Source of the DNA: Salpingoeca rosetta
Lineage: Eukaryota; Protista; Choanoflagellata
Length of the DNA stretch: 64,000 bases
NCBI GenBank assembly: GCA_033442325.1
Contig: JAWQFM010000005.1
Coordinates: 728,987-792,986, forward strand
Reading direction: 5' to 3'
Numbering within the stretch: the first letter of the stretch is position 1; each line of letters begins with the position of its first letter. The translations under genes and the position numbers were made by a program. The notes below the pieces were generated by a model, which saw only the letters and a program-made list of their open reading frames with translations, did no database searches and was not told the origin of the DNA. Positions 26,504-36,245 of this stretch are shown here, one piece after another.

Positions 26504-29500
26504 CTAGACGAGGAAGGTGAGTTCCTCGCTCGGGTTGTCGTCAATGACATGCGGGTCTGCCTCCAGCATCTTGCGGTATCCTTGCCGCACCGTCGTGTCA
26601 ATCACAGCGTCATCCACGTGGCGCCGCGTGAACAGCCGCTGCTGCTCGATGCCCTGTGCAATGAGCATGTCGATGCCGCCAAAGATACGGCACCCGGCAG
26701 CGTGCGCCTGCTCAAGCAGCGGCGTCATCCGCGGAATGTACGTCACGTCAAACACAACCGGCCTGCAGGCACGGGCGTGTAAAGGGGAGGGGGTGGGTGG
26801 GGTTGGTGTGAGAATGCAAGTAGATGCACGCTCAAACACGTCGTTGCCAGCACAGGCAACCATGAGTGTCTGCAGTTTCTCGTGCTTCTCCCACACACAC
26901 ACACGCACGCACACACACACGCAGGTACACAGAAAACACGCACAAAAGCACGTACGCACGCATACGCACACGCACCCACACATACGCACAAAAACACGCA
27001 CGCATGCATATGCACACATGCACAGATATCTCTGCACACACGCACGCACGCACATGCACACACGTGCACACACACACACACACACACACACACACACACA
27101 CACACACACACACACACACACACACACACGCACACACACACACATGCACACACGTGCACACACACACACATGCAGATACACACACACACAACATACAAAC
27201 AAAACGCGAAACGCACTTGGACTGGAGGAGGGTGGCGGGGACAGTCGCTGCGGCCGTTGGCGGGAGCGTGCTGATGATGAGGACCACATCGTCAAGGGCC
27301 TCAGCGCTGTCGATTGCGCGAACACCAAAGTCGCGGCACAGCGCCTCGGCTCGCTCGGGCGTCCGGTTCACCACATACACAGAGGTAAACCCGAGGTAGT
27401 GCAGCGCGTAGCACGCGGCCCGCGCCGTGCCGCCAGCACCAAGCACAAGCACGTTCCCCGTACGCTCCCGTGTCTCCGCGGGCATGGCAGACTGCAGCGG
27501 CTTCACAATGCCAACCCAGTCCGTGTTGAAGCCCAGCAGCTGCGTGTTGCCTGCGCCACCGCGAACCACCGTGTTGACGGCGCCAATGCGACGCGCGTGC
27601 TCGTCCATCCAGGCAAGCAGCGGCAGCACGGATTGCTTGAACGGCATCGTGACGCTCGCCCCCATGAAGCCTTCGCTGGCAAACACGGAGCGCACATCCA
27701 CCATGGACGTCGTGTCGAGGCGCTCGTATGTCCACGGCAGCCCAGCGAGCCGGAACCCCGTGCGGTGCATCAGCGGCGATGGGGACAGCGCCACGGGGCT
27801 GCCGACAATGAAGAAGGAGCGTGGGCGAAGCAGCCCCAGCGTGCGGCGGAGCCGCAGCACTTGCTCCCACGTGAGCTGCCCTGGGGCGGCAGTGCCGGGC
27901 ATGTTGGCGTGCGTGACGGGCGTGAGCATGGTGTTGGTGACGCGGGACAGCCGGCCCTGCTCGCCCATCAGCAGCAGGATCATGGGTTTCGTCACCACCT
28001 TCTCCGCATGCACGCGCTCCCGCGCCTGCTGCAGCAAGAAGCAGTCGGACACCTCCGTCGCCGTGAACACAATCTTGATCACGTCCACAAAGGGCAGATT
28101 GCTCCCTTGCACCAGCGTGAGCACCTCGTCCACGTGGGTGCACGGCCGCCCAAAGTGCTGCGACATGACAATGGTCGTCCCACGCAGCGGCGCGCACACG
28201 CTCTCAATGTGGCTCGAGTCCCAGCACGTCTCCACGTCCAGGGCATCGCACCCCAGCCGCGCCCCGAGCGACAGCAGGTTGAAGTAGCCGTCCTCGTCCA
28301 GGGCCAGCTTGCCGCCTTGCTTGGCAGAGCGCACCGTGAACAGAATGGGCTTGGCCGTGGATGCCCGCAGCAGGGCAATCTGGCCCGCAATGAAGGCGGC
28401 GTCCGTGGGTTGGTCAAGGAGGTCCACGCGAAGCTCCACCATGTCCACGTCCGCAACGAGGGAGGACAGGTCCTTGATGGTCGACAGGTCGCCAAACGTC
28501 AGCGACAGGAAACACGAGTCGTCGCGGAGCGGCGCAACGTGCTTGGCGACAACCACCCCGCAGAAGCGAGAAAAGCAGGCCGTGGTGTGTGCAATGTCGC
28601 TGTTGCCGCGGGCGATTGGGAACCAGTGCGTGCTGAGCGCCTCATAGTGGGGCCTGCGCTGCTGGTACACGGCGACAACTGGCGATGTGTAGCCGGGCCG
28701 CGTCGTGTCGGCCTCCAGGTAGGCGACAATGTCGTCAATGTGCCGGTCAATCCAGGCAATGGGGAGGCGGCTGCCTGCAAGCAATTCGCGACAGGCGGGC
28801 GTCTCGACAACGCCGCCCCCGCACGACACCACCGTGTTGTACGCGTGCTGCTCCAGTGCCTCCTCCAGAGCAGCCTGCTCCTGCTGCCTGAACTCATCCC
28901 ACCCGCGCTCCTCAATAAACGCGGGGATTGGCCCGTGCTTCTCCTCAAACAGGTCGTCCAGGTCGATAAAGTCGTAGCCAAGGTACGCGGCCGCTGCCCG
29001 GCCTAGCGTCGTCTTCCCTGCCCCACGCATCCCAATCAGCACCAGGCTGGTCGCCAAGAGGCCAAAAGGAAGGAGGAGGGAGAGAGGGAAGGGGTGGGGT
29101 CGGTGCATTCGCGCGTGTTCGCGTTTGTGTATGCGTGTGTTTTTGTGTGAGAGCGGTGACTGAAAAGTTACAGGAACCAGGAACTTTGGAACACTTGCAC
29201 GTGTGCATCATGAACACACACACACACACACACACACACACACACACACACACACACACACACACACACACACACACACACACACACACACACACACACA
29301 CACACACACGCACGCACGCGCGCACACAAAAACACNNNNNNNNNNNNNNNNNNNNNNNNNNNNNNNNNNNNNNNNNNNNNNNNNNNNNNNNNNNNNNNNN
29401 NNNNNNNNNNNNNNNNNNNNNNNNNNNNNNNNNNNTTCTCAGCTATGTCCGGCTCGCGCCGCTTGTTTTTCATTTTTTTTTTTTCCGTTACCGTCACTCT

Positions 29501-34746: not shown

Positions 34747-36245
34747 ATGAGCACGTTTGGGAAGTACTTTCGCGTGACGACCTTTGGCGAGTCGCACTGC
34801 AAAGGCGTTGGCTGCATCGTCGATGGGTGAGTTACGGCCGTGACAGTGAACAAAGGCTTGCTGGTGAATGCGAGCACGAGTGTGCATGTGTGCATGTGTG
34901 TATGTGTGCTGTGAACGCTTTGGTGCACGATCAAATACACACACACGTGTACTGTCACACACATGTTCATTCACATACACATACACACATGTACATGCAC
35001 ATACTCACATACACACTGTACAATCACACACACATGCACACACACACATGCACACACACACATGCACACACTACCACGGGATCAAGGGTGCCGCCGCTGC
35101 TGGAGCTGTCGGAGGAGGACATCCAGCCGCAGCTGACACGCCGCCGTCCAGGACAGAGCAAGCTCACCACCCCACGCAACGAGGCAGACAAGGTCTCAAT
35201 CCTCTCTGGCACGGAGTCTGGCCGAACGCTGGGCACGCCAGTTGCGCTGTTCGTGGCAAACAAGGACCAGAAGCCAGGCGACTACAACTCCACGCGGCAT
35301 GCCCCGCGCCCATCGCACGCCGACTACACGTACACAACCAAGTACGGCGTGCATGCGTCCAGTGGTGGCGGTCGTTCCAGCGCACGCGAGACGGTACGAG
35401 GTGATGCTTGTGTGTGTGTGTGTGTGTGTGTGTGTGTGTGTGTGTGTGTGCATGTGTGTGCGCATGTGTGTGTGTGTGTGCTTCTTGAGTGTAACAATGT
35501 TTGATGTGTTGTACGTTTGTTGATTTGGTATATGCGACCGTAACACATTCCTTCACATTCCACATGCATCCCCGCTGTCCCCTTCACCACCACCACCACC
35601 ATCTTCACGACGTCATGTTCGCTGCAGGGATTTGAGATTGGGACTGGCTTTGAGGGCACAAAGCTGCGTGGGTCTGAGCATAACGACGCGTTTGTGAAGA
35701 AAGGCACGTCGCTGGGCACGGAGACCAACAACAGCGGCGGCATTCAGGGTGGCATCAGCAATGGCGAAAGCATCTATTTCCGCGTCGCATTCAAACCTCC
35801 CGCCACCATTGGGCAGGCGCAGACCTCGGCCAACTTCAGCGGCGAGAAGGACGTGGTGGCGGCAAAGGGGCGACACGACCCGTGCGTTGTGCCGCGCGCC
35901 GTGCCCATTGTGGAGAGCATGGCTGCGCTTGTGCTCGCCGACGCCGCGCTTGCACAGTTGGCTCGACAGGGGGCCACGCCACGCCACGCCGGTGTTGGCA
36001 GCAACGATGTCGACGCGCTGTCTGCCGAGGACCTGCGCGTGCGCTACGACCGCGAGCTGCGGCTGAAGGAGCAGTACCAGAAGCGGCTGCAGAAGCGCGT
36101 TGAGGCCGATGCAAGGGCCATCCCCACCAGGTACCTGTATCCTGGGCTGATTGTCGCTGGCGTGTTGGCGGGCGTCTACCTTGGGCGCCGGCTGTTTGGA
36201 GCGCCGAGCTACGCCTCGTCATCAAGCCTCGTGCTCGGCTACTGA
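34747..36245 (+). CDS. ARO2: Chorismate synthase with C-terminal coiled-coil and TM extension; central ~120 aa absent from the assembly; exons 34747-34826, 35087-35393, 35628-36245
   Basis: [104 protein letters not shown]. Confidence 0.93.

What the first reader, a model, noticed from the sequence alone, without database searches (positions are those of the whole stretch)
26504..36245. Shikimate-pathway mini-cluster: AROM head-to-head with chorismate synthase
Seen: the AROM ATG (34318, -) and chorismate synthase ATG (34747, +) are 428 bp apart and divergent. Established: AROM catalyses shikimate steps 2-6 and chorismate synthase step 7; animals lack the pathway; in yeast ARO1 and ARO2 are unlinked. 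Inference: a probable close relative of animals encodes six of seven steps in a bidirectionally transcribed, potentially co-regulated metabolic gene pair. DAHP synthase (step 1) is not in this window.
Basis: partly seen in the sequence, partly recalled or inferred. Interest (0 to 1): 0.85.

Follow-up and report, generated by a model that had tools for sequence, protein, structure and literature searches.

The report
Conserved AROM–chorismate synthase divergent gene pair
In the choanoflagellate Salpingoeca rosetta the two genes for steps 2-7 of aromatic amino-acid precursor synthesis sit head-to-head 428 bp apart, as they also do in Monosiga brevicollis; this is a modest new case of conserved gene linkage, and the chorismate synthase as assembled lacks its central third.

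Summary
The window is Salpingoeca rosetta (scaffold GL832957.1). An 8-exon AROM gene lies on the minus strand (26504-34318) and carries all five domains. It faces a 3-exon chorismate synthase (CS) gene (34747-36245, plus strand). The start codons are 428 bp apart. The N-gap (29336-29435) lies inside AROM intron 6, and no coding sequence is missing there.

The same divergent pair occurs in Monosiga brevicollis (691 bp apart), while the flanking genes differ. So the linkage is inherited and is not an assembly misjoin. I found no such linkage in Sphaeroforma, Allomyces, Spizellomyces, Saprolegnia or three unnamed eukaryotic contigs. Trees fit vertical descent of both genes.

K-mer shares in probable RNA runs suggest that both genes are spliced and that nearly the whole intergenic stretch is transcribed. 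Co-regulation was not tested.

New caveat: the assembled CS (334 aa) lacks about 116-122 residues of its core. These would be two exons present in Monosiga and in the sister species Microstomoeca. The break sits at a (TG)36 tract between two conserved intron positions. I favour an assembly collapse (about 65%) over a real in-frame deletion (about 30%); this could not be resolved here.

The pathway's presence in choanoflagellates is already published. The scan had not noted this linkage on other DNA.

The parts
26504..34318 (-). Pentafunctional AROM gene (steps 2-6). Homology-guided model of 8 exons: 34318-33689, 33148-32936, 32526-32321, 32073-31869, 31170-30730, 30480-29792, 29046-27217, 26762-26504 (stop included). 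The model gives 1490 aa; the public annotation gives 1521 aa, so one or two splice sites (introns 1 and 4) are uncertain.
   Evidence: Pfam domains in canonical order; annotated 1521-aa product with the same Pfam set; tblastn of AROM homologues; splice model.
29047..29791 (-). AROM intron 6. It contains the assembly gap (N at 29336-29435), an (AC)57 tract at 29214-29328 and a (CACA)n tract at 29651-29791. The intron is absent in Monosiga, where this region is one exon.
   Evidence: The S. urceolata HSPs overlap across the junction. The linker is 38 aa, against 29-41 aa in homologues.
34319..34746 (.). 428-bp spacer between the two start codons: the putative shared (bidirectional) promoter plus both 5' UTRs. 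It holds (GCCAGGCA)n at 34349-34401, (AGCA)n at 34550-34578 and (GT)n at 34602-34671. There is no TATA and no TGASTCA; three TGACG half-sites are present.
   Evidence: Between 0.84 and 0.92 of its sampled words occur in contigs of probable RNA runs from four studies.
34747..36245 (+). Chorismate synthase gene (step 7) as assembled. Exon 1 is 34747-34826, intron 1 is 34827-35086, exon 2 is 35087-35393, a 234-bp 'intron' is 35394-35627, and exon 3 is 35628-36245 (stop included). This gives 334 aa, equal to the public protein P0001.
   Evidence: The exon sum of 334 aa matches P0001.
35394..35627 (+). Site of the missing CS core. The donor follows ...ARET (gtacga) and the acceptor (ctgcag) precedes GFEIG. 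These are the positions of Monosiga introns 2 and 4. Between them is only 234 bp, including (TG)36 at 35409-35480. The two exons encoding IGRVAAGA...SIPATK (about 116 aa) are absent from the whole window.
   Evidence: Pfam profile 10-147 and 250-327 of 327; yeast 1R52 residues about 130-251 have no counterpart.
35965..36245 (+). C-terminal extension of CS: a charged helical stretch followed by a hydrophobic tail. It is shared almost residue for residue with Microstomoeca roanoka. It is not part of the catalytic domain.

Best explanation
This is the Salpingoeca rosetta orthologue pair of ARO1 (pentafunctional AROM, shikimate steps 2-6) and ARO2 (chorismate synthase, step 7), arranged head-to-head.

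Shown:
- the identity of both genes;
- their divergent orientation with 428 bp between the ATGs;
- the intronic position of the assembly gap;
- the same arrangement in Monosiga brevicollis with unrelated flanking genes;
- vertical-looking phylogenies.

The pair was therefore already linked in the common ancestor of these two craspedid choanoflagellates, and it has outlasted the rearrangements that broke both neighbouring gene junctions.

Inferred: the short spacer acts as one bidirectional promoter region whose two transcripts start close together or overlap. The two genes would then be switched on together, and a breakpoint between them would damage both, which would keep them linked.

Separately, the reference sequence of the CS gene is probably collapsed at a (TG)n microsatellite and has lost two internal exons. 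The real gene most likely encodes a full-length enzyme of about 450 aa, like its sister species.
For: Gene identity: Pfam; 100% match to 'chorismate synthase [Salpingoeca rosetta]'; annotated AROM of 1521 aa with all domains.

Conserved linkage. In Monosiga CH991554.1, AROM (1520 aa, minus) and CS (431 aa, plus) are 691 bp apart. A tblastx of that 21.7-kb locus against the 64-kb window finds only AROM and CS, collinear, and nothing from the flanks. Three CS intron positions are shared.

Linkage absent elsewhere: Allomyces, Sphaeroforma, Spizellomyces, Saprolegnia and unnamed eukaryotic contigs, confirmed by tblastn.

Vertical descent. In the CS tree, S. rosetta + Microstomoeca has 99* support and Monosiga + Choanoeca 96*. 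Choanoflagellates sit next to ichthyosporeans and fungi and apart from bacteria. In the AROM tree, choanoflagellates form one side of a 100* split among eukaryotic five-domain AROMs. An S. rosetta HGT survey has no occurrence of 'shikimate' or 'chorismate' in its main text (PMC7971027).

Expression and spacer. Probable RNA runs hold 0.71-0.73 of 33600-35600. That equals exons plus spacer, since introns make up 27.6% of the stretch. They hold 0.84-0.92 of the spacer itself.

CS collapse. Microsatellites occur in nearly every intron here. The flanking exons are intact. The S. rosetta tip branch (0.11) is shorter than that of Microstomoeca (0.18), so there is no sign of relaxed constraint. Microstomoeca has the full core and the same C-tail.
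Against: - Co-regulation was not measured.
- The run kinds are guesses, and contigs show neither strand nor transcript ends.
- No sequence motif is shared between the S. rosetta and Monosiga spacers beyond chance, and no Gcn4/AP-1-type site is present.
- Only two genomes show the linkage. Grau-Bove et al. 2017 report that some microsynteny is retained between these two species in general (PMC5560861), so one conserved pair may be background.
- In Barroeca monosierra no CS exon lies within 689 bp upstream of AROM. This is inconclusive because the contig ends there.
- For CS, no read-level or transcript evidence could be obtained, so a real deletion is not excluded.
Confidence: 0.6

Rival explanations
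1. Passive retention. The two genes became neighbours by chance in an ancestral choanoflagellate and have stayed adjacent because no rearrangement happened to fall in the short spacer. There is no shared regulation, and no selection acts on the linkage as such.
For: Only two genomes share the linkage. Some Salpingoeca-Monosiga microsynteny exists generally (PMC5560861). The spacers share no motif. The genome is compact and divergent pairs are common. The linkage is absent in the other lineages sampled.
Against: Both flanking junctions are similarly short in S. rosetta: about 590 bp after CS and about 1 kb after AROM. Both lost synteny, while the 428-bp junction did not. The two genes belong to one pathway, which is improbable for a random neighbour: about 2 in 11,600 genes, using a gene number from my own knowledge.
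Confidence: 0.3
2. Real in-frame deletion. The S. rosetta strain truly lacks the two central CS exons through recombination or slippage between intronic (TG)n tracts. It would then make a 334-aa catalytically dead, tail-anchored protein, and the shikimate pathway would stop at EPSP. The linked pair would be a relic in this species.
For: The assembled sequence is continuous with no N at 35394-35627. The junction keeps the reading frame and canonical GT/AG sites. The public annotation uses it. No S. rosetta protein fragment carrying the missing piece exists in the 15-billion-protein collection. The species feeds on bacteria, so auxotrophy is tolerable (inference).
Against: AROM is fully intact. 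The CS flanking exons show no frameshift or stop and no accelerated branch. The sister species Microstomoeca has the complete core. Microsatellite-rich introns make assembly collapse likely. The negative search is uninformative, because no S. rosetta transcript-derived CS of any form is in that collection.
Confidence: 0.3
3. Co-transfer. The two genes entered the choanoflagellate lineage together as a linked unit by horizontal transfer.
For: Bacteria do cluster aroB, aroK and aroC: three of 80 metagenome aroB loci had aroC next door. In the most conserved CS exon the best non-choanoflagellate hits include Deltaproteobacteria at 75-76% identity.
Against: AROM is the eukaryote-specific five-domain fusion, and choanoflagellates form their own clade within it. 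The full-length CS tree puts choanoflagellates with ichthyosporeans, Corallochytrium and fungi, apart from the bacterial group. Both genes carry spliceosomal introns at positions shared between species. The main text of the S. rosetta HGT survey has no occurrence of 'shikimate' or 'chorismate'.
Confidence: 0.03
4. Assembly artefact. The adjacency itself is a scaffold misjoin.
For: The scaffold has N-gaps nearby (29336-29435 and 6137-6476).
Against: There is no gap between the genes. Independent DNA runs hold 0.86-0.97 of the words across 33600-35600. The same arrangement occurs in the independent Monosiga assembly.
Confidence: 0.01

Closest known systems
Monosiga brevicollis AROM / chorismate synthase locus (CH991554.1, MONBRDRAFT_32779 and its neighbour)
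   Same: The same two genes, the same divergent orientation, a short spacer (691 bp against 428 bp), aligned start codons and three shared CS intron positions.
   Different: Monosiga CS is complete (431 aa, five exons). Its AROM has the EPSPS-to-SDH part in one exon, with no intron where S. rosetta has the gap-bearing intron 6. The flanking genes are unrelated. No spacer motif is shared.
Fungal ARO1 (AROM) and ARO2 (chorismate synthase), e.g. Saccharomyces cerevisiae; solved yeast CS 1R52/1R53
   Same: The same enzymes and the same five-domain order. S. rosetta CS exons align to yeast CS residues 1-129 and 252-369.
   Different: The genes are unlinked in yeast (own knowledge) and are not neighbours in Allomyces or Spizellomyces. 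Yeast CS has no tail-anchor-like C-terminal extension. The S. rosetta assembly lacks the equivalent of yeast residues about 130-251.
Conserved head-to-head pairs of functionally related genes in eukaryotes (integrin alpha/beta in Capsaspora and Corallochytrium, PMC5560861; yeast GAL1-GAL10, own knowledge)
   Same: Two genes of one function, divergently oriented over a short shared spacer, and kept linked across species.
   Different: Co-expression is documented there (PMC5560861 for integrins) but not here. The conservation here is shown only between two choanoflagellates.
Bacterial aro operons (aroC-aroK-aroB type)
   Same: Physical linkage of chorismate synthase with the DHQ synthase and shikimate kinase genes (L056, L059, L079).
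   Different: Those are co-directional polycistronic operons of separate genes. Here there is one fused five-domain gene and a divergent monocistronic partner, both with introns. The trees do not point to a bacterial origin.

Membership tests
Pentafunctional AROM polypeptide (ARO1 type) | Five domains on one polypeptide in the order DHQ synthase, EPSP synthase, shikimate kinase, type I dehydroquinase, shikimate dehydrogenase | tested here: met
   Pfam hits in that order along the minus strand. The annotated 1521-aa product has the same set. The in-frame 8-exon model has 1490 aa.
Pentafunctional AROM polypeptide (ARO1 type) | Continuous open reading frame across the assembly gap | tested here: met
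   The gap lies in intron 6. The flanking exons join in phase 2. The S. urceolata HSPs overlap across the junction. This rests on homology, not on transcript reads.
Pentafunctional AROM polypeptide (ARO1 type) | Catalytic activity of the five steps | not testable with these tools
   Needs enzyme assays or complementation of aro1 mutants.
Chorismate synthase (Pfam PF01264, ARO2/AroC) | Full-length match to the family profile, including the central region after ...SSARET up to ...SIPATKGFE | tested here: not met
   Only profile positions 10-147 and 250-327 of 327 are matched. About 116 aa are absent relative to Microstomoeca and Monosiga. About 122 aa are absent relative to yeast 1R52. This may be an assembly fault.
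Chorismate synthase (Pfam PF01264, ARO2/AroC) | Orthology with choanoflagellate and opisthokont CS | tested here: met
   Sister to Microstomoeca roanoka CS (99*), inside a choanoflagellate group.
Bidirectional (divergent) gene pair with a shared promoter | Opposite strands, 5' ends facing, less than about 1 kb apart | tested here: met
   The ATGs are 428 bp apart on opposite strands.
Bidirectional (divergent) gene pair with a shared promoter | Mapped transcription starts within one nucleosome-free region, and correlated expression | tested here: inconclusive
   Only k-mer shares are available: 0.84-0.92 of the spacer is present in probable RNA contigs. There is no strand, TSS or expression-level information. 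Read laying gave no layout.
Eukaryotic metabolic gene cluster | Adjacent non-homologous genes of one pathway | tested here: met
   AROM and CS are neighbours with no gene between them.
Eukaryotic metabolic gene cluster | Three or more pathway genes (the usual working definition, own knowledge) | tested here: not met
   The neighbours within 10 kb are an EF-Tu-type GTPase and two proteins without Pfam hits in S. rosetta, and a formin, DUF6787 and a kinase in Monosiga. The rest of the 64-kb window was not scanned for DAHP synthase.

The most novel reading that the evidence does not exclude
The AROM-CS head-to-head pair may predate the choanoflagellate-animal split. If so, six of the seven shikimate steps sat at one locus in the last common ancestor, and a single deletion on the animal stem lineage could have removed them at once. 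In living choanoflagellates the pair would be held together by an obligatorily shared promoter with abutting or overlapping 5' UTRs that senses aromatic amino-acid supply.
Probability: 0.12. Interest if true: 0.65.

Novelty: new member of a known kind. Interest (0 to 1): 0.4.

Why it matters
Animals lost the shikimate pathway on their stem lineage while choanoflagellates kept it (Richter et al. 2018, PMC6040629). If steps 2-7 are encoded at one small, conserved, divergently transcribed locus in choanoflagellates, two things follow. It gives a concrete and genetically tractable unit for testing how amino-acid biosynthesis is regulated in the closest relatives of animals, since S. rosetta can be transfected and edited. 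It also raises the testable idea that a single event could have removed most of the pathway.

In practical terms, the report flags that the reference S. rosetta chorismate synthase model (334 aa) lacks its catalytic core. Metabolic reconstructions that count this gene as functional, or as lost, rest on an unverified stretch of assembly.

Tried and rejected
(1) Read laying. So there is no read or contig layout for the gap, the spacer or the CS break.

Later local scripts ran homologue proteins against the stored window file inside the sandbox only.

(2) A metagenome scan with the AROM N-terminal exon returned 80 loci. Nearly all were bacterial aroB, and no close choanoflagellate relative was among them.

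(3) A search for S. rosetta-derived fragments of the missing CS core, using Microstomoeca residues 125-255 as query, gave a best hit of 64% identity. None came from S. rosetta. This is uninformative.

(4) Barroeca monosierra. The Logan contig with the AROM start has only 689 bp upstream, AT-rich and without a CS exon. This is inconclusive.

(5) Diplonema papillatum AROM has no genomic record.

(6) A motif comparison of the two spacers found nothing above shuffled controls and no TGASTCA, CRE, CARE or TATA.

(7) The supplements of Grau-Bove 2017 hold no synteny table as text, so the background rate of conserved neighbours could not be quantified. Richards 2006 (PMC1563581) is not held.

(8) Misjoin and co-transfer were considered and rejected (see the rival explanations).
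Full report
What is there. The window is GC-rich (55.8%), has introns and has two N-gaps. A protein search with the conserved CS exon returned a 100% match to 'chorismate synthase [Salpingoeca rosetta]' (334 aa) on a 2.36-Mb scaffold. The exact-protein look-up placed it on GL832957.1 of GCA_000188695.1. There the neighbour is an annotated 1521-aa product carrying DHQ_synthase, DHQS_C, EPSP_synthase, SKI, DHquinase_I, Shikimate_dh_N and Shikimate_DH.

Pfam scans of the minus-strand ORF pieces give the five AROM activities in canonical order. 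Plus-strand pieces give Chorismate_synt. The AROM ATG (34318) and the CS ATG (34747) are each the first ATG after an in-frame stop. Each aligns to residue 1 of homologues. The spacer 34319-34746 is 428 bp.

The assembly gap. The N run at 29336-29435 is flanked by (AC)57. It lies between the last EPSPS exon and the large exon that encodes shikimate kinase, dehydroquinase and shikimate dehydrogenase. AROM of Salpingoeca urceolata (named) aligns as residues 604-833 to 30477-29791 and residues 818-1435 to 29060-27210. The two alignments overlap in the query, so no coding sequence is unaccounted for. The best canonical splice is exon end 29792, intron 29791-29047 and next exon start 29046, in phase 2. 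It reads ...[20 protein letters not shown] and gives a 38-residue linker, against 29-41 in two homologues. Every alternative splice pair also encloses the gap. In Monosiga this region is a single exon.

So the gap is intronic and the frame is continuous. This rests on homology; I could not obtain transcript reads. My homology-guided model has 8 exons and 1490 aa against the annotated 1521 aa. One or two splice sites (introns 1 and 4) therefore remain uncertain, but no domain is missing.

Is the linkage more than chance? The Monosiga brevicollis CS (MONBRDRAFT_32779, 431 aa) lies on CH991554.1 next to a 1520-aa five-domain AROM, divergently oriented and 691 bp apart. A tblastx of this 21.7-kb Monosiga locus against the whole 64-kb window finds only AROM and CS, collinear from start codon to stop. 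None of the Monosiga flanking genes is found (formin, a 792-aa protein, DUF6787, a kinase). The S. rosetta flanks are an EF-Tu-type GTPase and two proteins without Pfam hits.

Three CS intron positions coincide in the two species: after codon 27, after ...ARET, and before GFE(I/V)G. The arrangement is therefore inherited from the common ancestor of the two species. It has outlived the rearrangements that broke both adjacent junctions, which in S. rosetta are of similar length (about 0.6 and 1 kb). This also rules out a scaffold misjoin, as do the DNA runs from several studies that hold 0.86-0.97 of the words across 33600-35600.

How far does the linkage extend? CS is not next to AROM in any of the following:
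- the ichthyosporean Sphaeroforma arctica, where the divergent neighbour is an SLC35F/EamA transporter;
- the fungi Allomyces macrogynus and Spizellomyces punctatus, where the neighbour is RNase HII;
- the oomycete Saprolegnia diclina;
- three unnamed eukaryotic metagenome contigs.
A tblastn confirmed that no unannotated CS lies in those loci.

For Barroeca monosierra the only contig that holds the AROM start has 689 bp upstream and no CS exon. That result is inconclusive. The gene-model names of Ichthyophonus (CS Ihof_evm2s292, AROM Ihof_evm1s535) and Chromosphaera (Nk52_evm15s1020, Nk52_evm2s745) do not look adjacent, but I do not know the naming rule. On present sampling the linkage is choanoflagellate-specific.

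Origin of the genes. In a CS tree of 36 sequences, S. rosetta is sister to Microstomoeca roanoka (99*). Together with Monosiga and Choanoeca perplexa they form a 96* group. Choanoflagellates sit beside ichthyosporeans, Corallochytrium and fungi and apart from the Deltaproteobacteria that scored well on the most conserved exon. In an AROM tree of 35 sequences the choanoflagellates (S. rosetta, Barroeca, Monosiga, S. urceolata and two unnamed Logan proteins) form one side of a 100* split among eukaryotic five-domain AROMs. Their branches are long. Both trees are quick-search and unrooted. They fit vertical descent and give no support to co-transfer. The main text of a published HGT survey of S. 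rosetta has no occurrence of 'shikimate' or 'chorismate' (PMC7971027).

Expression and the spacer. Read laying gave no layout, so only k-mer shares are available. Runs whose small assembled size (6-34 million letters) fits transcriptomes hold 0.71-0.73 of the sampled words of 33600-35600. Introns make up 553 of those 2001 bases (27.6%), so exons plus the whole spacer would give 0.72. The same kind of runs, from four studies, hold 0.84-0.92 of the words of the spacer alone. The simplest reading is that both genes are transcribed and spliced, and that nearly all of the 428 bp is transcribed. The two 5' UTRs would then abut or overlap, leaving little untranscribed DNA between them. This is indirect: the run kinds are the tool's guesses, and contigs show neither strand nor ends. 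The S. rosetta and Monosiga spacers share no k-mers beyond shuffled controls. Neither has TGASTCA, a full CRE, a CARE or a TATA box. Co-regulation is therefore an inference from architecture, not a result.

A fault in the CS gene. Pfam matches only profile positions 10-147 (exon 2) and 250-327 (exon 3) of 327. Aligned with ten other CS sequences, the public S. rosetta protein lacks the block from IGRVAAGA... to ...SIPATK. A tblastn of Microstomoeca and Monosiga CS finds residues about 131-246 nowhere in the window. Against the solved yeast enzyme (1R52), residues 1-129 and 252-369 are matched and about 130-251 are not.

Exon 2 ends after ...ARET at 35393 (donor gtacga). Exon 3 starts at 35628 with GFEIG (acceptor ctgcag). 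These are exactly the positions of Monosiga introns 2 and 4, and in Monosiga two exons lie between them. In S. rosetta only 234 bp lie between, with (TG)36 at 35409-35480. The junction is in frame, which is why the annotation yields 334 aa.

Two readings remain for the CS fault.
- Assembly collapse between (TG)n tracts of two introns. Nearly every intron at this locus carries such a tract. The flanking exons are intact. The S. rosetta tip branch (0.11) is shorter than that of its sister (0.18), so there is no sign of relaxed constraint. Microstomoeca has the full core and the same unusual C-terminal tail.
- A recent, real deletion.
I put these at about 65% and 30%, with a small remainder for the exons lying elsewhere in the assembly. 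A search for S. rosetta protein fragments carrying the missing block found none. However, the collection holds no transcript-derived S. rosetta CS of any form, so this says nothing. Until it is settled, 'six of seven steps' is secure for steps 2-6 and provisional for step 7.

Comparison with what is known. The retention of the shikimic acid pathway in choanoflagellates and its loss on the animal stem lineage are published (Richter et al. 2018, PMC6040629). Conserved head-to-head pairs of functionally related genes are a known kind. Grau-Bove et al. 2017 describe integrin alpha/beta pairs in Capsaspora and Corallochytrium, and they note some Salpingoeca-Monosiga microsynteny in general (PMC5560861). 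I found no paper that mentions AROM-CS linkage; the full-text search had zero hits. The finding is thus a new member of a known kind: a two-gene, pathway-coherent, divergent pair conserved within choanoflagellates. It does not meet the usual three-gene definition of a metabolic cluster.

Verdict. The linkage is real, ancestral to at least two craspedid choanoflagellates, and absent in the other lineages sampled. A shared bidirectional promoter is the best mechanistic reading (overall confidence 0.6), with passive retention as the main rival. The most useful by-product is the flag on the reference CS model. Interest is moderate (0.4).

Noticed in passing
window 35965-36245; P0003 (Microstomoeca roanoka), P0013 (S. 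urceolata), P0005 (Monosiga): CS carries a C-terminal extension: a charged helical stretch followed by a hydrophobic tail (...[22 protein letters not shown]...). Microstomoeca shares it almost residue for residue. Monosiga and S. urceolata also end in hydrophobic stretches. Acanthoecid, fungal and ichthyosporean CS do not. This suggests membrane anchoring of CS in craspedid choanoflagellates.
   Followed up: partly
window 26892-27201, 29214-29328, 29651-29791, 30620-30681, 31508-31751, 32228-32277, 32700-32909, 34957-35071, 35409-35480, 36249-36338: Almost every intron of both genes, and the 3' flank of CS, holds a long di- or tetranucleotide microsatellite, up to (TG)122 and (CATA)52. This is a likely cause of both the N-gap and the suspected CS collapse. 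It also blocks read laying.
   Followed up: partly
   Followed up: no
window 6137-6476: A second assembly gap (340 N) lies outside the finding.
   Followed up: no
L088:1-689 (Barroeca monosierra, Logan contig of SRR14727191): The region upstream of the Barroeca AROM start is extremely AT-rich and has no ORFs, unlike the GC-rich S. rosetta and Monosiga spacers. The Barroeca AROM branch is also very long (1.63) in the tree.
   Followed up: partly
L001:4310-7378 against window 27210-31176: Monosiga encodes the EPSPS-to-SDH part of AROM in one roughly 3-kb exon. S. rosetta splits the same region with introns 5 and 6, so intron gain or loss has occurred within the conserved pair.
   Followed up: partly
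L056, L059, L079 (metagenome contigs): Three of 80 bacterial aroB loci have aroC (chorismate synthase) directly adjacent. These are ordinary bacterial aro operons, and they came up only as a by-product.
   Followed up: no
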